Source: Mytilus edulis
Lineage: Eukaryota
Direction: 5' to 3'
DNA: 64,000 nucleotides
Assembly: GCF_963676685.1 (NCBI RefSeq)
Contig: NC_092344.1
Span: 88,226,001-88,290,000, forward strand
The position numbers and the translations under genes are program-made. Each line of letters starts with the position of its first letter. The first letter of the stretch is position 1. A model generated the notes under the pieces. That model was not told where the DNA came from and searched no databases. It saw only the letters and a program-made list of their open reading frames with translations. Of this stretch, positions 8,647 through 34,390 are shown one piece after another.

Positions 8647-8690
8647 ACGTCACTGATGAGTCTTTTGTAGACGAAACGCGCGTCTGGCGT
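8647..8690 (+). ncRNA. Type I hammerhead ribozyme, intact core, in a partial retrozyme repeat (~8480-8730)
   Basis: Stem I ACGTCA/TGGCGT; CTGATGA at 8653-8659; stem II GTCT-TTTGT-AGAC; GAAA at 8673-8676; minimal stem III within the palindrome ACGCGCGT; GTC cleavage triplet at 8682-8684. Confidence 0.85.
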
Positions 8691-20962: not shown

Positions 20963-21637
20963 CTGTAATTGCTTTTACATGTGTCAGCTTTAATATTGGC
21001 ATTCAAGAGACGAATGTTTTCCTGAATATCCCTGTCCCTTCTTTTGTATACCTATTGTTAGACGACTGATCAAGGATAAGGGTTAATCTTCAACGCATGT
21101 TTTTGCTTTATCGTATATTTTGTCAAGCTATAATATGGTATTGAGAGCAGATGTTGAATAGTATCTATTAAATTTACTGCTAACCTTTTATAGGTTAGAC
21201 GATAAGAACAGGGCATTTTGTAAAGACCACCATCTTTTGTAGAACGCCATACATTGTCATTCAGATGTTTGTTATTGTAACATTTATTTTTAGATTGTTG
21301 TCTCATTGATGTAGATCCCATAGATTTTAGTCGTAAAAGTAAAAAAAAAATTAGAGTTAAGCATCAAGTCAGTTAATTGGAGGGGTGTTAACGGGACTTT
21401 CTACGTTACATACTTAAATCCATTAAAAAATAAACACAAGTAATTGGTTTTGATGAAATATACCATTGAATGTAAAATACTGTCACTAAATATGCCTTTG
21501 AACAGTTCGTTTTATAATGAGTATTTATTGTTTCTGAACTTCAATAACAGAAATTAAATTAAAAAAAAATTGAAAAAAAGTAATACTATATAATGTTTAA
21601 ACAGAAATGGTCATCATCACCTTATTACACCTCCTTG

Positions 21638-23942
21638 TTATATGCCAGTTTCACCTTGCTCGGTGTGTCCTTTCGGTGTATTCTCTACGAATTCATTGTT
21701 CGCATTTCCATCCATCTGTGGAAACATCTGAGATGATCTAAAAAAGAACGTAAATTTATATATATAAAAAAAGAAAGAAAGAGTTAAACTTTTAGATCTA
21801 TGATGTTGATTGAAGTATTCTTCACAGTTTGGCTGGCAGTGTTTATCTTCTTTACTCTTGCCACGTAAACAATCAACCAGATTTAGATTCTGAAAGATGA
21901 TGACTCATAGAAAACCAACGTTTGAAGTGATACCGGTAAAAATACTATTCATTATAATGTATGTGTATCCATAAGGGGCCCTTTAATCGCCTATGAAGTT
22001 TATAATACGTATTACTTACATAGTGATGCAGTTATCATTTCAAGGCAATAGAGGTCAATAGAAAATTGATCAAGAATCGAATCGATAGTTTTTGGATGCA
22101 AAAGGTTTGATTAAAAAAAATCAAACTTATCGTCTAGTGTGTTGTTTTATATGCAAATACACTGATTCGAAATTAACTGAGAAAAGAGGCTGAATCCACT
22201 GCATATGTTTGCTAAAGACCTCCATATGTTTATATTACAGAATTTGATTGAGCTCTTTGGATGGTTCCGTACGGCAAGATATCTCATCTATCCTTCTATT
22301 TCACATTTACAATGGAGCCTCACTTTCATTTTTTGAAACTGATGTATGCATACAATATTTTTCTTAGTGCATTTTATTCAAACTGCAACATACCCTTTAT
22401 TTTCAGAGAATTCCATAGTTTGCACACTTGCACAATCTAAACATCTGCAGGAGCATCGATTTCCATAATGTTTTGCTGAATAACATTTAAAGACTTTGCT
22501 TCTACAAAGATATCTACATTTGGTATGACAATCTGCTTCTGACTCGTGAACTAAAATAAATTACAACATAGATATATCAATAACATGTGCTTATATTGTT
22601 GTCGAATGTATAACTAACCCTTAACTTTTATAATTAGTTATCAAAGGTACCAGGATTATAATCTAGTACGCCAGACGCGCGTTTCGTCTACATCAGACTC
22701 ACCAGTCACGCTCATATAAAAATATTTATAAAGCCAAACAAGAACAAAGTTGAAGAGCATGGAGGATCCAAAATTCCAAAAAGTGGTGCCAAATACGGCT
22801 AAGGTAATCTATGCCTGGGATATAAGCTACTTTACAGGGTTTTTAAAAGCACATTTGGGATGTAGATTCTTCTTGAAGGTGACAAATCACATGAAAGAAA
22901 TAATGATAAGGAAACTGGGTTACCTCCGTGTAAATTTTATAAAAGTTTTTTTTTTAAACCGCTGAATCAAACCGTCTATTTTCGAAACCAAGATCCAGTC
23001 CTTTTTTTATTTGGTTCTGACTTCCCTGAATTTGTTATAGCCATATTCGATACAATATGTTCCACATGTTGAGCAGACCTGCAACTCCTTCAGAGCACAC
23101 GAGATTACCTTTTGGGTCTTAATTAGGCTCGTCTTGTTCAGTCTTTAGTCTTTTATGAAGTGTTTTGTAGCCTGTCGTTGTAGTTGATGTGTTTCCTTCG
23201 GTTTTAGTTTGTAACCCGGGTTTGTTTTCTCTCAATCTATTTATGACTTTTGGACAGCGGTATACTACTGTTGCCTTTGTTTTTTTTTCGTCGTTTTTCG
23301 TGATTTATCTTGGTATTGCCGTTTTTTTTATTGACTTGTTTCTTGTAACTGTTTTCGCTTTGAACACGATTTTGTTTATTCTTCCGGTCACAATTTGGTT
23401 CATCCTTTTCATTCACAGTTTTGTTGATATTACGTCTCGTTAATACCCATACTTCAATGTGCTGTGTCAAATATTTTGCCGTTATCGTTCATTATAGATT
23501 TAAAAAAAAATATCTTTGCAATATACAGTAGGCCAAAAAAAGATATGCCACGCAAAAAAGAAACAAAGAATATCAAATTTTAACACAGAAGACGCTATGG
23601 TGGTATCAAATACACAATCTCTAGCAAAATTAAACGACTCAAGTAAACGGTAAAGCATACCACACTTTTATAACTTTTTGTTCTAAGCATCAATAAATAT
23701 ATCAAGAGAGATTGCCCGGATGTTATTTATTTAGAATGCACATGAATCAATTTATCAAGTATCTTGTTTTAGGGTTGATGTATTAAAAAGGTATTTATTA
23801 AGATTAACACGTTTTGATTATTATAATATCATCGTCTTCATACGTTAATACAGTTGATTTTGACAAAGTTACCTACCTTATGTATATGATTCAGAAAGTC
23901 AACATGCAGTTAATGTAAATTGACAAATTGGCGGTTTTTATA
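21638..23942 (-). pseudogene. Divergent mytilin locus lacking the start/signal-peptide exon 2; exon 3 (22550-22394), exon 4 (21737-21638) and exon 1 (ends 23877) intact
   Basis: Exons 3+4 read open: (V)HESEA-DCHTKCRYLCRSKVFKCYSAKHYGNRCSCRCLDC-ASVQTMEFSENKGSSQMFPQMDGNANNEFVENTPKGHTEQGETGI*. Splice sites, TATAAAA (23942-23936) and AATAAA (21529-21524) are intact. No MK..-type exon 2 was found in 22551-23876. Similarity to the mytilin A/D gene stops near 22610 and resumes near 23534, already inside intron 1. Confidence 0.82.
22636..22825 (-). mobile_element. Partial retrozyme repeat with mutated hammerhead (22668-22711) in the intron of the exon-2-less mytilin
   Basis: Reverse complement of ~35950-36137; the core reads CTGGTGA instead of CTGATGA. 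Confidence 0.8.
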
Positions 23943-26678
23943 ATGTTTGATCCAGAAATAACGATTCCGGCGGACGGGCTTTGCTTTTTATTTTAGTTCT
24001 GCGACGGAAATTAGTCTTGTTGTTTACTATATTATTTCTGAAATCTAGGGCGGTTGTATATAAAGTTTAACATATAAGGACTAATCAACACCAATTGCAC
24101 TAAAAGCAGTGAATGACGATCATGAAATCCGAAAAGTAAGCAGTAACTCAGACCACTTCAACACCCGATTAGATGCTGATTGAAATTAAATGAAATTTTG
24201 AATAGTAATCTACAAGATAATATTCGATATAGGTGTCTTGGTAAATTTAACGAAGATGTGAAATGATAACTTTATTTAAAACTGACTACTTGTTTATCCA
24301 TTACACTCCCATTGTTCTCATAAGGGATGATCATGAATAGTTAAACAAGTCAGTAAATGCTCGTAAATTTCAATCTAAGAATCAAATGCTTTGTTTAATG
24401 TTAGTCCTTAATTTAAGAGTGTAAGTACAACGCCTTTAGATCTTCAATAAATAATCTGTAATTGATGACTGTCTATCACAAAAAAAATGAGTCCCGGCCC
24501 AGAGGATTTCCACAGTGTTATTTGCGTTGATATGGAATTCCATTTTCCCTAATAAAGCTAACGCACATAGACTATACAACTGTATACACATTACCATAGT
24601 CTCGTTGATGCTTATAAAAACCTATTTAAGGTTTCGAGGAACATAACATTTTTAACTGAGCTACACGTCCATTCGACTTAGCTGTATAACAGATAGCAGA
24701 ACAGGAACGTGTCCGCTGATTCAATTCTTTCGTGAGTTCTAATTATAAATCAACTAATAATTAATGACCAGTCCAGTTGCAAATATTTCATGAATGTTAA
24801 GTACGAAAACGCAATTATACGTTGAATGAACGGTTCCATAGGTAAATTTAACTAGGGTTTATGGACACATAACAATGGGTAGTTCACCGGGAGAGGCAGG
24901 GAATCACTGCAAGTTATTAAACGAGCCCCGGCATATGTTTTGGAAGTCATTGTTTTCCATTTTGAGTTGCAAATGTTTTCATTTAGGAAGTGTATTTTAA
25001 TTTTATTTTATCCAATGTTTTATGTGAGTAGAGATGCAATGCATTTGCCTTGTTATTTATTTTCCAGGGTTAAATACTGTAGCTGTAAACAAAATTAAGG
25101 GTGGGGTGAGCACATTTATTTTTTTTCCTTCTGACGAACATGTATTTAGATTTTTTTTTATCTCCTTCCCACTGGTGGTATTATATTTTACCTTTAGTAC
25201 GCCCCGAAATTCCTATATCTCTCGAAAATCCAACTTAACACGGTTGATTGCATGCAATGCAATGGTCCTGAATAGACATACATTAAGGTGAAACACCATC
25301 GAAATTCCATGACGCTTCGATTAAGATTTCATAAATATGTCAAAAGAAAAAAAATCCTATAACGAATCTTGCGTATAATTTGCCAATCGAGCGTACCTTT
25401 CGTCAGTCAAATTGTAAGAAAGATCTATTTTCACTTGAGTGCCTATAGTCTGTTGATATACCTGATTATTAACTTATGCGAAAGTAGAGACCTCAAACAC
25501 TATTTGTCTGATATAACTTGCTTTATAGATATGTCTTCAAACAAGATACTGTTAGATAAGGAACTTAATAAAGATTAATAATTTGGTAATGACCATCTAT
25601 TCGCTCATTCATTGTTTAAAACAGAAGTAACATGTTGCTTTTATTATTTCTGAATAAAAAAAACCTGCTTACTATTTCATGCACTCGAAGCGCTTTTCTT
25701 TGTGTACCTTCATCAGGAACGCATAAGGCAGCATGTTTGATGGTCATTGACCTCAAAATTATAATCAAATCCATCTTATGTAATATTTTGATTTAGGGAA
25801 TTGAAACATTACTCTCTTAGCAATTTTTTAATCTATAAACGGACAATTTACAACCTGTTCGTTATAAATCTTGTCAGCTCCGACGTACCAACCACTGATC
25901 TATCGAGTTCTTCAAACCTACTCTAAAGCATTGTCGTAGGTATAAGAATGTAGGACGACATGACTATATACCAGTAGGTTAAGTACTTTGCGGTTGCCTC
26001 CAGTAACTGTGAGCTTTTTTTGTGCGGTACTGTTTATCATTAAAATTGCTTTTATTTGTGTAAGCTTTAATATCGGTTTCAAAGATTAATGCTTTTCCTG
26101 TTCTGAATTTGACTTTTCGTCCTTTTGTTTAGCCTTTGTTAGTCCATTGATCGAGATGAAAAATGAAAAAACTTCAGGGCATATTTTTGCTATATCGTAT
26201 AATTTGTCATGTTGGGAATTCATTTGATGTTGTTTGTTTAATTTTTGGACAACTTTTTATATTGTGGGTGATTGAGACCAATACATGTTCTAAAGATCAC
26301 TTTATTTCGTTGAAGGCCATACGTTATCGTGTATTTATGTATTGTTCCGTTTGATTGCTGTCTCATTGGTGTAGATCCCACATATTTTATTCATAAAAGG
26401 AAGTGAGGCATCACGAAAATTCAGTTCGGGTAATTACGAGCATGTTTATCATTTATTTGAATCAATTGTAACCTTAACACATGTAAGCTGCTCTCTCGGA
26501 TATAATATAGTATGTTACTAATAATATTTTTGAACTGTAAGACTTGTACGTATTTGAAACACAGTTCTATTAATAATTAGAATTTATTGCATCAGAACTA
26601 CAAATTGGAACAAAAAGAAAGTAAAACTATGTAATGTTTTAACAGAACGGGTCATCATCACTCCATTGGATATTCCCT

Positions 26679-28391
26679 TTATATGCCAGTTTCACCTTGT
26701 TCGGTTTCTCCTGTGGGCATGTCTTGGGCGAGATCAATGTTCTCGTATTCATTCATCTGAGATGATCTAAAAAAAAAAAATAAAAAAAAATGAATTACTA
26801 AATAAAGATTGGAAACTCTTAAAAGGTAAATAGTCTATTATGTTCAGGAGCATACCAGGAGTATAGGGTCCACTAGAAAGCCAACGTTTGGAGCGATACT
26901 TGTAAAAACAACTAAATATTTTTAATTCATGTATCATAAGGGGATCCCTAAACCCGCCCTTGAAGTTAATACTATGTATAACTGTCATAGTGATGAAACT
27001 ATAATTTCAAAGTACGAACAGCAGAGATGAAAAATAATCAAAAATCGAAATTATTTATCGAATGCAAAGGTGATAAAATCGTCTTGTGTGTCTTTTATAT
27101 GTCGTTTACTAGTATACGTGCATTTATTTGTAGAGATAGAGTTAACTAAGAAAGGAGTCCACTGCATATATTTGGAGAGGGATTACATGAGAACATCTTA
27201 AATAGTTTAATATAGCTCTTAGAATTGTTATGTACGGCAAGACATCTCATTTATCATTGGCTAATTCAATAGAACTAAAAGAGGGAGATTAAACAAATTA
27301 CATTGACAATACGACCTCACTTACAAATAAACAAATTACATTTACAATACGACCTCACTTACAAATTGTGTCAACTGATGTATGCATACACTATTTATCA
27401 TAATTCATAAGGCAGCCGAAAAGTTAAATATTTAGTATTACTTAAACATACCCTTCATTTTCTGGGAATTGCATGGTATGCTCACTGCCACAACGGAAAC
27501 ATTTGCAGTAGCATCGTCCTCTAAAACTGGCTGATGCCCAACCTTTACATCTTCTGCCTGCACATTTAGCTTTACATCTGGAAGCACAACCTGCTTCTGA
27601 CTCATGAACTTAAAGAAAACAAAACATAGATGTATTAACGAAATATGGTAATATTGCAGGGGATTGTTACCAAATGCATTACAAATCCATAAATGTTTGG
27701 CTATTTTAACTGTCATTATGTTTCGACCATTTTCTTAGCACTATTTTTTTATTTAAAGTATTTATCATTGAAGAAGCGATACGCACGGCAGGAAGAATAG
27801 CATAAACTTAAAAAAAGAATATTTATTACTTATTATCGCTGGTAAAGTCTTCATTCGCAGAGATATATAATATTTGTTTATATAATTTTGATAAACGTTA
27901 TAAGTCTACATAAACTTTAATTGAAAATGATATGTCTTGACAAAAACAATGGTTTGATACAATGGAGGAACATTAAGGTTTTGGTCATGGAAGCATGAAT
28001 TAACGTAACAGGATTGATATATAACATAATCATAAAACGTTTCAATACTTCCAATTTGGTATAGTCGGTTTTTTCTCCGACTTATATATTTCATTGTAAA
28101 GTTTGTTTCTTTTTACACGCTTTTATCTATTCATCAAGTCACAGTTAAGTTCTTTCTTTCATTCACTGATTTGTTCATATTACGCGTCCCTATGAACACT
28201 CGTATTCCAATCTGTTGTATCACATCTTTTGCGCTGTCGTTCTTTGTAGATAAAATAAAACGCAGACATGACATAACATTTTACTCAGCTTTTGAAAAGT
28301 TAAAATGTCATTTAATTATAGATACCCAAATTATGTACATACCTATAAGAAGTACTGCAAGAGCAATAGCCAGGATAACTGCTACCTTCAT
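26679..28391 (-). CDS. MytA: Mytilin A (A/D locus) precursor (97 aa), coding exons 28391-28343, 27608-27452, 26766-26679
   Basis: Spliced product MKVAVILAIALAVLLIVHESEA-GCASRCKAKCAGRRCKGWASASFRGRCYCKCFRC-GSEHTMQFPENEGSSQMNEYENIDLAQDMPTGETEQGETGI. The mature peptide equals recalled mytilin A (mytilin D recalled as FRRRC). GT/AG junctions, with an AAG acceptor for exon 3; AATAAA at 26588-26583. Confidence 0.96.
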
Positions 28392-32439: not shown

Positions 32440-34390
32440 TTACATCACAGTTTCACTTTGCTTGATTTAACCTTTCTGCATGTCCTGTAATTGGTCAGTG
32501 TTCTCGTGGTCTTTTTGTCTGTGCTTGCATCTCAGATGGTAAGGAGATAAAATATGATAAATAACAAAATGGAGGAATAAATAGAATTTCAATATCATAA
32601 CACTGAGGATGTCGAAGTAGAAATCATAGCCTTTTACTGTCAGCCATTCTCTCTTTTACCCTTATCAAGACTATTGTCAGATCTGTTCATGATAGGTTTT
32701 ACTGACATGGTGTGGTGAATTTAACATGTTGCAAAATCAACATAATTCTAAAAACCTACAAACTGATGTATGCTTATAATATTTACCAATGTAAAGCAGG
32801 CAGTCAAAACTACATAATTGATAAATGTTTTACTAGTAATTTTAACAGGCCCTTAATTTTCAGAGAATTTTATGGTACGCTCAATGGCACAACTGAGACA
32901 TCTGCAGTCACAGGACCATACATAACTGACTGCCAATTTTATATACAGCGTCTGGCCGTCCATTGGTATTTACAACTGGAAGCACAACTTGCATTTGCGT
33001 CTTGGACTTAAACAAAATATCATAGATGTAATGTATGTATAAAAAAGAAAATGTGGTAAGATTGCCAATGAGACAACTGTCTACAAGAGACCAAAATGAC
33101 ACAGAACTATAGGTAACCGTACGTTATTTGTTATTATTTCAATGTATTTTTCATTCATGTTGAAAAATCCCATGTATTTCATTCATATTCAATTATGTGT
33201 GTACTTTTTTAAAGTGTTTTTTTAATTTTTTTATGATACGAACAGGATAACAAATACAAATACAATTGTCATTTGATTTCTGGACTTTCTGTTCTTTTTC
33301 CTCGGAATTCGGTAATTTTGTTATTTTACCTTTTAACAAAAAGGGGGTAAATTTTTGGGAAACCAATTGTTAACTAGAAATAAATTAAATTCGTTTTAAA
33401 AAAAAGTTTAAGTTATACAAAAAATATTGTAAAAAGTATTGTTATATCATACTTGATAACGTTAAATTATTAGCAAGCTAAAGTTAACATTTAGGAGACG
33501 TGATATGAAACAACAAGACAACAGTACAACAGAGATCAAAGGACCAAAATTGTATTAAATTAAAATGAATCATCAATTTGTTTAATCCTTGCATATGTAT
33601 CCGTCGGCCTTTTAAATTTTTTTTTTTATTATTAAACAATTATAAACTAGGAGCTACTATATTGGTAGTTCTGTTAAATACGGTTATTTGTCTTGGCAAT
33701 CATCCCCATCTTTTCATTTTAATTTAGGAAATATTTCTCTGCTTTTTTAAATGTTTATCAGTCATTAATTTGTTTAAATAAAATTATATCCCTATAAGAT
33801 GTACTGCAAGGCCAATAGCCAGAATAACTGTTACCTTCACATTGGATCTTAATATGGTACCATAAAATTAGACGAGAAAAACAATACAGTTAACTATAGG
33901 GTAATATCAAGAACGAAACTTTGTAAACTATAACCTCAAAACAAAATTCAAATGAATTTAAGAGGAACATGTGTTTATGTATGTTTAACCAAGTCAGGAA
34001 TATAATAGTTCTTGTCCATTCGTTTTTGATGTGTTTTATTATTTGATTTTGCCATGTGATTATGGACTTTCCGATTGGATTTTCCTCTAAGTTCAGTATT
34101 TTTGTGATTTTACTTTTTAAAGCATTGCTGAATTTAATAACATTTGGAAAGAGTGTTATTTCATAACTATTAAAAGTAATAGATGTATCAAGCAAGCTTT
34201 GCAATATTGTTTGTACAATATACTTTTCTTATTCATTGAAATGATCAAAATCAAAATATAATCACCCTTTTTTTCATAATGATACAGTGATACGATTTTA
34301 TTTTTACAAAGTCACCTACCTTGTATAATTATTTCAGCTACTCAGCAGGATCAATTAAAGGAACACTAATTTGCAGTTTTTACACATAGG
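32440..34390 (-). pseudogene. Decayed mytilin C-like pseudogene (exon remnants 33840-33792, 33006-32851, 32540-32440; exon 1 ends 34320)
   Basis: Start ATG is changed to GTG (33840-33838) and the exon 2 donor to GG. Exon 3 reads QDANASCASSCKYQWTARRCI* (TAA 32941-32939), followed by a 1-nt deletion and a second stop; its donor is GC. The exon 4 acceptor AG is lost and the exon is frameshifted. The TATA box is changed to TGTAAAA. Exons and flanks align best to mytilin C. Confidence 0.93.

What the first reader, a model, noticed from the sequence alone, without database searches (positions are those of the whole stretch)
21638..23942. Hidden sixth mytilin: a divergent peptide with a relocated cysteine and an open frame, but no signal-peptide exon
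Seen: exon 3 encodes DCHTKCRYLCRSKVFKCYSAKHYGNRCSCRCLDC, which shares only 9/34 residues with mytilin A, its closest paralog by HESEA motif, intron 3 and promoter. It has no stop or frameshift and still has 8 Cys: canonical Cys15 became Phe (TTT) and position 17 is Cys (TGT). Net charge is about +6 plus two His. Exon 4, splice sites, exon 1, TATA, the TTCCGGCGGA box and AATAAA are intact. Known: mytilin B pairs C2-C27, C6-C29, C10-C31 and C15-C34, so only the fourth bridge would be re-registered. Inference: the gene diversified as a functional AMP and lost exon 2 only recently or only on this haplotype, so complete alleles of a possibly undescribed mytilin may exist. I cannot exclude that it is an already named divergent mytilin (F, K, N or a pseudomytilin).
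Basis: partly seen in the sequence, partly recalled or inferred. Interest (0 to 1): 0.85.

Follow-up and report, generated by a model that had tools for sequence, protein, structure and literature searches.

The report
Mytilin pseudogene missing its signal-peptide exon
This is a mussel antimicrobial-peptide (mytilin) gene that lost its start codon and signal-peptide exon through a small deletion; it is almost certainly one of the two pseudogenes already reported in the mytilin cluster, and a complete relative survives in Mytilus trossulus.

Summary
On the minus strand lie an intact promoter, exon 1, an open exon 3 (22550-22394) with eight Cys, the fourth moved two residues, and an open exon 4. 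Exon 2 is absent. About 191 nt of the mytilin A/D paralog, including exon 2 and both its splice sites, are replaced by 27 nt at 23535-23509, and no remnant is left.

The reading is only partly right.
- The loss is not private to this haplotype. Independently assembled DNA contigs from two other organism labels cross the same junction, one bridging it fully and one overlapping it.
- Gerdol et al. 2020 (PMC7653742, Additional file 1) describe a 35-kb M. galloprovincialis cluster with C, D, B, G1 and two core pseudogenes, mytilin J and P, present in all 16 genomes. This window has the same layout, so the candidate is very probably J or P. The other is the decayed copy at 32.4-34.4 kb.
- RNA gives no clear spliced transcript.
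- The lineage was once a working peptide. Non-synonymous change far exceeds synonymous change against mytilin A/D. A complete 102-aa M. trossulus protein (XP_063407324.1, unnamed) is 76% identical and has the same moved Cys.

An open frame is expected by chance at this age. Verdict: an ordinary, already catalogued pseudogene. The modest new point is the intact M. trossulus relative.

The parts
23935..23977 (-). Core promoter: conserved box CCGTCCGCCGGAA (23965-23977) and TATA box (23942-23935)
   Evidence: The exact box occurs only three times in the window, upstream of the candidate, A/D and C. The six-promoter alignment shows the candidate keeps the motif, while the decayed copy g5 has lost it.
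23877..23912 (-). Exon 1 (5'UTR). The start is inferred from TATA spacing; it ends at 23877 before a GT donor. It carries a lineage-specific upstream ATG at 23905-23903 that opens a 4-codon uORF.
   Evidence: 82.5% identical to exon 1 plus promoter of mytilin A/D over 183 nt. Sequence read.
23509..23535 (-). Deletion junction: 27 nt stand where the paralogs have the intron 1 acceptor, exon 2 (start codon and signal peptide) and the start of intron 2
   Evidence: Flanking homology to mytilin A/D is given. No exon 2 remnant was found. The junction is fully bridged by record 16 of X5 (23250-24060). It is covered by record 22 of X6 (23322-23559), which overlaps record 23 (23530-23746).
23181..23282 (.). 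High-copy repeat fragment inside the former intron 2
   Evidence: Summed contig depth is about 1e5-1e6 in the DNA runs, against 8-20 on the flanks, with loose ends at 23181, 23239 and 23282.
22631..22822 (-). High-copy repeat with a degenerate type I hammerhead core at 22668-22711. It holds a chance ORF (ATG at 22760) that ends at a phase-1 GTGAGT.
   Evidence: Depth is in the millions in DNA runs and high in RNA runs. RF00163 scores 20.2 bits against a gathering score of 34, E = 0.11.
22394..22550 (-). Exon 3: end of the signal peptide, mature peptide (22533-22432) and start of the C-terminal extension. The frame is open, with 8 Cys and the fourth moved by two residues.
   Evidence: Pfam PF10690 scores 18.9 bits, below the 28.5 cutoff. 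The AlphaFold model has pLDDT 81.8 and superposes on mytilin B (2EEM) at rmsd 1.5 A over 34/34 residues, Z 4.4.
21738..22393 (-). Intron 3 (GT...AG)
   Evidence: Read. One low-depth X18 contig runs unspliced from exon 3 into it, at 22465-22320.
21524..21737 (-). Exon 4: acidic C-terminal extension, stop TAA at 21640-21638, 3'UTR and AATAAA at 21529-21524
   Evidence: It is 75% identical to the C-terminus of the M. trossulus protein.

Best explanation
The locus is an exon-loss pseudogene inside the canonical six-gene mytilin cluster of a Mytilus edulis-complex genome. It is most probably the gene already listed as mytilin J or mytilin P. It descends from a distinct mytilin sublineage that split from an A/D-like gene and diversified under positive selection. 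That sublineage moved its fourth cysteine two residues along the first beta-strand. I infer that the side chain stays on the same face, so the C4-C8 bridge could be kept. An intact member survives in M. trossulus. In the lineage of this window, a net deletion of about 164 nt removed the intron 1 acceptor, all of exon 2 and the intron 2 donor. With the deletion went the start codon and most of the signal peptide (the first 16 of 22 residues in the A/D paralog). The promoter, exon 1, exon 3 and exon 4 remain. Any exon 1 to exon 3 transcript has no in-frame ATG before the mature peptide: the first one is the Met just after it. So no secreted peptide can be made. The open frame and the eight cysteines are leftovers of a fairly young loss, not evidence of present function.
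For: Shown: exon 2 is absent between conserved flanks. The same junction is present in DNA contigs of two other organism labels at single-copy depth. The window holds six mytilin genes over 35 kb in the order C, decayed copy, A/D, candidate, B, G1. This matches the published cluster of C, D, B, G1 plus the core pseudogenes J and P (PMC7653742 supplement). Raw RNA reads of X21 give zero depth on exons 1 and 3. In X18 the candidate's exons sit at depth 2-4, with an unspliced intron 3 piece and a piece upstream of the promoter. The bin holding the conserved end of exon 4 reaches 544, and loose ends there look like paralog transcripts. All four exon differences seen among the three organism labels change an amino acid (my codon mapping). 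A past working phase is supported by pN 0.45 against pS 0.10 versus A/D. By my count, 16 of the 25 mature-peptide differences from A/D are shared with the complete M. trossulus protein, including the moved Cys.
Against: The J and P sequences appear only in figures, so identity with either could not be checked by sequence. Only one raw RNA run was sampled (6% of it), its tissue is not known, and it comes from another organism label. One 151-nt X18 contig of exon 4 carries 21 further letters that do not continue into intron 3; it may be an exon 3 to exon 4 splice, so trace transcription is possible. The promoter is fully conserved, which is unusual for an old pseudogene.
Confidence: 0.8

Rival explanations
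1. Exon 2 presence/absence polymorphism: complete, working alleles of this gene still segregate in the same species, and the assembly happens to carry the deleted allele.
For: Mussel AMP genes show extensive presence/absence variation (PMC7653742). The promoter, splice sites and frame are intact. A complete relative exists in M. trossulus.
Against: The window and the two other organism labels examined all carry the deletion, with junction contigs at the same depth as the flanks. The own genome holds only one copy. No protein with this peptide, other than the M. trossulus one, is in the 15-billion-protein collection. The published cluster lists two core pseudogenes in all 16 genomes.
Confidence: 0.08
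2. The gene is still coding through a replacement first coding exon. One possibility is the repeat-derived ORF at 22760-22703, which starts with ATG, is hydrophobic and ends at a phase-1 GTGAGT that would splice in frame to exon 3.
For: Sequence only: the ORF and donor are in the same phase as the lost exon 2.
Against: The supposed donor is the mutated catalytic core of a high-copy hammerhead repeat. Raw RNA reads cover the repeat heavily but give zero depth on exon 3, and no joint to exon 3 was listed. The leader has no basic n-region.
Confidence: 0.03
3. The locus is kept as a non-coding or regulatory transcript, which would explain the conserved promoter without a peptide product.
For: The promoter motif is as well kept as in the expressed paralogs. 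Low-depth RNA-labelled contigs touch exon 1, exon 3 and exon 4.
Against: The same run also covers an intron and the region upstream of the TATA box at the same depth, as DNA carry-over or nascent RNA would. The promoter may simply be young, or kept alike by gene conversion with A/D. No test of function exists.
Confidence: 0.05

Closest known systems
Mytilin J / mytilin P, the two core pseudogenes of the M. galloprovincialis mytilin cluster (Gerdol et al. 2020, PMC7653742, Additional file 1, Data Notes 17.2 and 21.2)
   Same: It lies in a 35-kb cluster with C, D, B and G1, in which six genes include two defective ones. It was found in every individual examined. It shows raised variation between individuals, all of it amino-acid-changing here.
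   Different: The published text gives no sequence and does not name the defect, so it is unknown which of the two this is. The exon 2 deletion and the open exons 3 and 4 are described here from this window.
M. trossulus XP_063407324.1 (LOC134691053, 'uncharacterized protein')
   Same: 76% identity over exon 3 and 75% over exon 4. It has the same array C-X3-C-X3-C-X6-C-X9-C-X-C-X-C-X2-C and the same Asp-Cys start and Leu-Asp-Cys end of the mature peptide. It scores above the Pfam PF10690 cutoff.
   Different: It is complete, at 102 aa with a start codon and signal peptide. It comes from another species, and its synteny and expression were not checked.
Mytilin A (M. edulis) / mytilin D (M. galloprovincialis), the neighbouring paralog at 26.6-29.0 kb
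   Same: It is the closest paralog by promoter and exon 1 (82.5%) and by intron 1, and it shares the His-Glu-Ser-Glu-Ala end of the signal peptide.
   Different: Only 9/34 mature residues are shared. A/D has the canonical Cys15, an intact exon 2 and a higher positive charge.
Mytilins K, L and N, with an alternative cysteine array (Greco et al. 2020, PMC7168163)
   Same: They are mytilins in which one cysteine has moved while eight or nine Cys and the CS-alpha-beta scaffold are kept.
   Different: In K, L and N the C1-C2 loop is lengthened to 7 residues and C5 is displaced. Here the C1-C2 loop is canonical and C4 is displaced.
Pseudomytilins
   Same: They are divergent mytilin-like peptides with the same exon structure.
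   Different: They have the canonical array and a weakly acidic C-terminal extension. They are encoded in a separate multi-copy cluster, here on another chromosome (L005-L008).

Membership tests
Mytilin gene family (functional member) | [quoted passage not shown] | tested here: not met
   Exons 1, 3 and 4 are present with canonical splice sites. Exon 2 is deleted with no remnant.
Mytilin gene family (functional member) | N-terminal signal peptide with a start codon | tested here: not met
   Only the last residues of the signal peptide, which exon 3 encodes, remain. The first in-frame ATG lies after the mature peptide.
Mytilin gene family (functional member) | Eight Cys in the array C-X3-C-X3-C-X4-C-X11-C-X-C-X-C-X2-C | tested here: not met
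   Eight Cys are present but the spacing is X6 / X9, so C4 is moved by two residues. The complete M. trossulus protein has the same variant.
Mytilin gene family (functional member) | Cationic mature peptide followed by an anionic C-terminal extension | tested here: met
   Counted from the translations: the mature peptide is +6 and the extension about -5.
Mytilin gene family (functional member) | Match to Pfam PF10690 (Myticin-prepro) above the gathering score | tested here: inconclusive
   Exon 3 alone scores 18.9 bits against a cutoff of 28.5. Exon 3 of mytilin A/D scores 36.3 and the M. trossulus relative 62.9.
Mytilin gene family (functional member) | CS-alpha-beta fold like mytilin B (PDB 2EEM) | tested here: met
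   The AlphaFold model has pLDDT 81.8 with a helix and then strands. 2EEM is aligned over all 34 residues at rmsd 1.5 A, Z 4.4, rank 4 of 48,161 chains. Caveats: it is a prediction, and the input alignment contained mytilin B. Foldseek gave no match.
Mytilin gene family (functional member) | Abundant spliced mRNA, as for hemocyte mytilins | tested here: not met
   X21 raw reads give depth 0 on exons 1 and 3. X18 gives depth 2-4 with unspliced pieces, against 544 in the bin holding the conserved end of exon 4. The tissues are not known.
Core pseudogenes mytilin J / P | Located in the 35-kb canonical cluster with C, D, B and G1 | tested here: met
   Six genes lie at 5.4-40.0 kb of the window, with the candidate between A/D and B. 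Published description read.
Core pseudogenes mytilin J / P | Cannot encode a precursor | tested here: met
   Loss of exon 2.
Core pseudogenes mytilin J / P | Present in all individuals | tested here: inconclusive
   It is present, with the same deletion, in the window and in single runs of two other organism labels. Twenty runs from 10 studies hold part of the stretch, but only four runs were laid.
Core pseudogenes mytilin J / P | Sequence identity with the published MytlJ or MytlP exon 3 variants | not testable with these tools
   The sequences are only in Fig. S133 and on scaffold mg10_s00171, which are not held as text. No paper text holds the peptide strings.

The most novel reading that the evidence does not exclude
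The candidate and M. trossulus LOC134691053 define an undescribed mytilin subtype whose fourth cysteine is re-registered by two residues. On this reading the subtype is a working, secreted antimicrobial peptide in M. trossulus and was silenced by exon loss in its sister species. That would give a natural pair for asking how a disulfide can move within a CS-alpha-beta scaffold, and why one species keeps the peptide.
Probability: 0.45. Interest if true: 0.4.

Novelty: already known. Interest (0 to 1): 0.25.

Why it matters
For annotation, it explains why no gene model exists here. It also links an unnamed RefSeq protein of M. trossulus to the mytilin family and to a named pseudogene. For AMP evolution, it is a tidy case of birth and death in a tandem cluster. 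One paralog diversified quickly, with non-synonymous change well above synonymous change. It shifted one disulfide anchor and was then lost in one lineage by a single small deletion, while a sister species kept it. It is not a new kind of gene. The peptide encoded in this window is not expected to be made.

Tried and rejected
Synteny, its exon 2 and a codon-level dN/dS against the candidate were therefore not done.
- A word-based protein search with the exon 3 open frame found nothing. The same search with the M. trossulus protein found only that protein.
- The metagenome contig scan found no relative.
- Single-sequence phmmer against PDB did not reach mytilin B. The profile search did, but that profile contains mytilin B itself, so it is not independent.
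- Foldseek against PDB gave no significant match for the 51-residue model.
- Paper searches for the peptide strings and for 'mytilin J/P/O/H' in main texts gave nothing.
- The idea that a repeat-derived ORF supplies a new signal-peptide exon was considered and set aside.
The hammerhead-like core (20 bits, below threshold) lies about 800 nt downstream of the deletion junction, inside the former intron 2.
Exons 3 and 4 were concatenated only inside a local script for the drift simulation.

Full report
**What is there.** The window is a chromosome piece of a Mytilus genome (G000:C1). It carries six mytilin genes, all on the minus strand and spanning about 5.4-40.0 kb. Exon by exon matches to the A-type gene and a cysteine-pattern scan give this order:
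- a C-type gene (exon 3 at 38.5 kb);
- a fifth copy, g5 (exon 3 at 33008-32850);
- the A/D-type gene (26.6-29.0 kb);
- the candidate (21.5-24.0 kb);
- a B-type gene (exon 3 at 13.3 kb);
- a G1-type gene (exon 3 at 6.2 kb).

**The candidate's anatomy.**
- The box CCGTCCGCCGGAA is at 23965-23977 and the TATA box at 23942-23935.
- Exon 1 ends at 23877 before a GT donor.
- Exon 3 is 22550-22394, between an AG acceptor and a GT donor. It is open and encodes the last residues of the signal peptide, a 34-residue peptide (window:22432-22533:-) and the start of the C-terminal extension.
- Exon 4 starts at 21737 and is open to the TAA at 21640-21638. AATAAA lies at 21529-21524.
- The peptide has eight Cys spaced C-X3-C-X3-C-X6-C-X9-C-X-C-X-C-X2-C. 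Seven are invariant across the paralogs and the fourth sits two residues later.
- It shares 9/34 residues with the A/D paralog.

**Exon 2 is deleted, not hidden.** blastn with exon 2 of the A/D gene finds the homolog in all five other genes, including the decayed g5, but not in the candidate.
- Local alignment of the exon 1 to exon 3 interval shows candidate 23887-23536 matching A 28846-28452, and candidate 23508-23310 matching A 28260-28056.
- The 191 nt of A between these blocks hold the intron 1 acceptor, exon 2 (28420-28343, ATG at 28391) and the intron 2 donor. The candidate has 27 unrelated nt there (23535-23509).
- A Smith-Waterman scan for any remnant scores 13, equal to the shuffled mean of 12.9. 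The paralogs score 36-49.
- Further downstream the former intron 2 holds two very high-copy repeats (23181-23282 and 22631-22822). The second contains a degenerate type I hammerhead core at 22668-22711, scoring 20.2 bits against a gathering score of 34.
The hammerhead-like element is real but decayed. It lies about 800 nt downstream of the deletion junction, so it did not replace exon 2.

**Consequences for coding.** An exon 1 to exon 3 transcript would have no in-frame ATG before the mature peptide. The first one is the Met just after it. Exon 1 has also gained an upstream ATG (23905-23903) that opens a four-codon uORF, where the paralogs read CCTG. No secreted peptide can be made from the structure present.

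**The deletion is shared.** Twenty public runs from ten studies hold part of the stretch. I laid two DNA runs from two other organism labels.
- Record 16 of X5 runs unbroken over 23250-24060.
- Records 22 and 23 of X6 cover 23322-23559 and 23530-23746, overlapping across the junction.
- The bridging records have depths of 7.8 (X5) and about 17-18 (X6), like their single-copy neighbours. The X6 bin that holds the junction also draws other contigs. Only a 1-nt difference is listed near the junction.
- These contigs differ from the window by about 2-3%.
- Mapped to codons by me, the exon differences listed are Lys to Thr and Val to Gly in the mature peptide, and Ala to Glu and Glu to Lys in exon 4. 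All four change an amino acid, and none is a stop or a frameshift.
- At two of these sites the other organisms carry the residue of the M. trossulus protein, so the window's residues are the derived ones.

**Expression.** In the raw RNA run X21 (another organism label, 6% of the run read), depth is zero on exons 1 and 3 and at most 0.33 on exon 4.
- In X18 (the window's organism label; its RNA status is a guess), the candidate is touched by contigs of depth 2-4. These include one running unspliced from exon 3 into intron 3, one inside the former intron 2, and one extending upstream of the promoter. DNA carry-over or nascent RNA would look like this.
- In the same run the bin holding the conserved 3' end of exon 4 reaches depth 544. 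Loose ends there resemble the exon 4 of the A/D paralog read.
- One 151-nt contig of exon 4 has 21 extra letters that do not continue into intron 3. It might be an exon 3 to exon 4 splice; I could not read those letters.
- There is therefore no clear evidence of a mature mRNA, and trace transcription is not excluded.

**It was once a working gene.** Nei-Gojobori counts for the mature peptide against A/D give pS 0.10 and pN 0.45, a ratio of about 6. A Fisher test on rounded difference counts (2 of 20 synonymous, 37 of 82 non-synonymous) gives p = 0.004. Neutral decay cannot produce this excess.
- A full scan of 1.84 billion representative proteins found one real relative, P0001 (E = 1.7e-16). 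It is RefSeq XP_063407324.1, 'uncharacterized protein LOC134691053' of M. trossulus.
- P0001 is a complete 102-aa precursor with a signal peptide. It passes Pfam PF10690 at 62.9 bits. It is 76% identical over exon 3 and 75% over exon 4 and has the same X6/X9 cysteine spacing.
- By my count, 16 of the 25 mature-peptide positions where the candidate differs from A/D are shared with P0001.
- The divergence and the moved cysteine therefore predate the split of the two sequences and are features of a sublineage, not decay.
- An AlphaFold model of exon 3 (pLDDT 81.8) puts the moved Cys at the start of the first strand. It superposes on mytilin B (2EEM) at 1.5 A over all 34 residues, Z 4.4.
- That a two-residue shift in a strand keeps the side chain on the same face is my inference. 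The disulfide itself is untested.

**The open frame is not informative.** In a simple neutral simulation of the 84 codons, the frame stays open with all eight Cys in 54% of trials at 1.2% drift, 27% at 2.5% and 8% at 5%. The alleles compared here differ by only 2-3%.

**Comparison with what is known.** Gerdol et al. 2020 (PMC7653742, Additional file 1, Data Notes 17.2 and 21.2) describe the M. galloprovincialis mytilin cluster.
[quoted passage not shown] They call these six core genes, found in all 16 genomes.
- J has 7 and P has 10 exon 3 variants. The authors ascribe this variation to relaxed constraint.
- The window reproduces that picture: four genes with open exon 3 and an exon 2 match, plus two defective ones, over 35 kb.
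- The other defective copy, g5, has stops and a frameshift in exon 3, GTG in place of the start ATG, a GG in place of the exon 2 donor and a deleted promoter box.
- So the candidate is very probably J or P. I cannot say which, because the sequences are only in figures.
- It is not F (an allelic variant of B), nor K, L or N (long C1-C2 loop and displaced C5), nor M. None of the 30 peptides in Table 1 of Greco et al. 2020 matches it (PMC7168163).
- It is not a pseudomytilin either. Those have the canonical array and lie on another chromosome here.
- Pseudogenisation by exon loss is stated to be known in mussel mytilins (PMC7356231).

**Verdict.**
- the exact lesion, and the evidence that it is shared across three organism labels;
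- the selection signal from its working past;
- the link to an intact, unnamed M. trossulus gene with a re-registered fourth cysteine.

**Limits.** The tool that would have fetched the M. trossulus locus was closed, and only one reads call was allowed.

Noticed in passing
window 32440-34382 (- strand): A fifth mytilin copy (g5) is a fully decayed pseudogene. Exon 3 has two stops and a frameshift, the exon 2 start is GTG instead of ATG and its donor is GG, the promoter box is deleted, and TATA reads TGTAAAAA. It is probably the other of the two published core pseudogenes (J or P).
   Followed up: partly
window 8647-8690 (+ strand): A type I hammerhead ribozyme (RF00163) scores 35.7 bits, above the gathering score of 34, between the G1-type and B-type mytilin genes. 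It is probably part of a retrozyme or Penelope-like repeat.
   Followed up: no
window 22631-22822 and 23181-23282: Two repeat fragments in the candidate's former intron 2 have summed contig depths of about 1e5-1e6 or more in DNA runs. They are also heavily covered on both strands in raw RNA reads. The first contains a mutated hammerhead core (CTGGTGAG in place of CTGATGAG).
   Followed up: partly
G000:C10:45755500-45815396 (L005-L008): There is a separate cluster of at least four pseudomytilin exon 3 copies on another chromosome, two of them with identical peptides. This agrees with the published multi-copy pseudomytilin locus outside the mytilin cluster.
   Followed up: no
window 23903-23905 (- strand): The candidate's exon 1 has a private upstream ATG (four-codon uORF) where all five paralogs read CCTG.
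   Followed up: no
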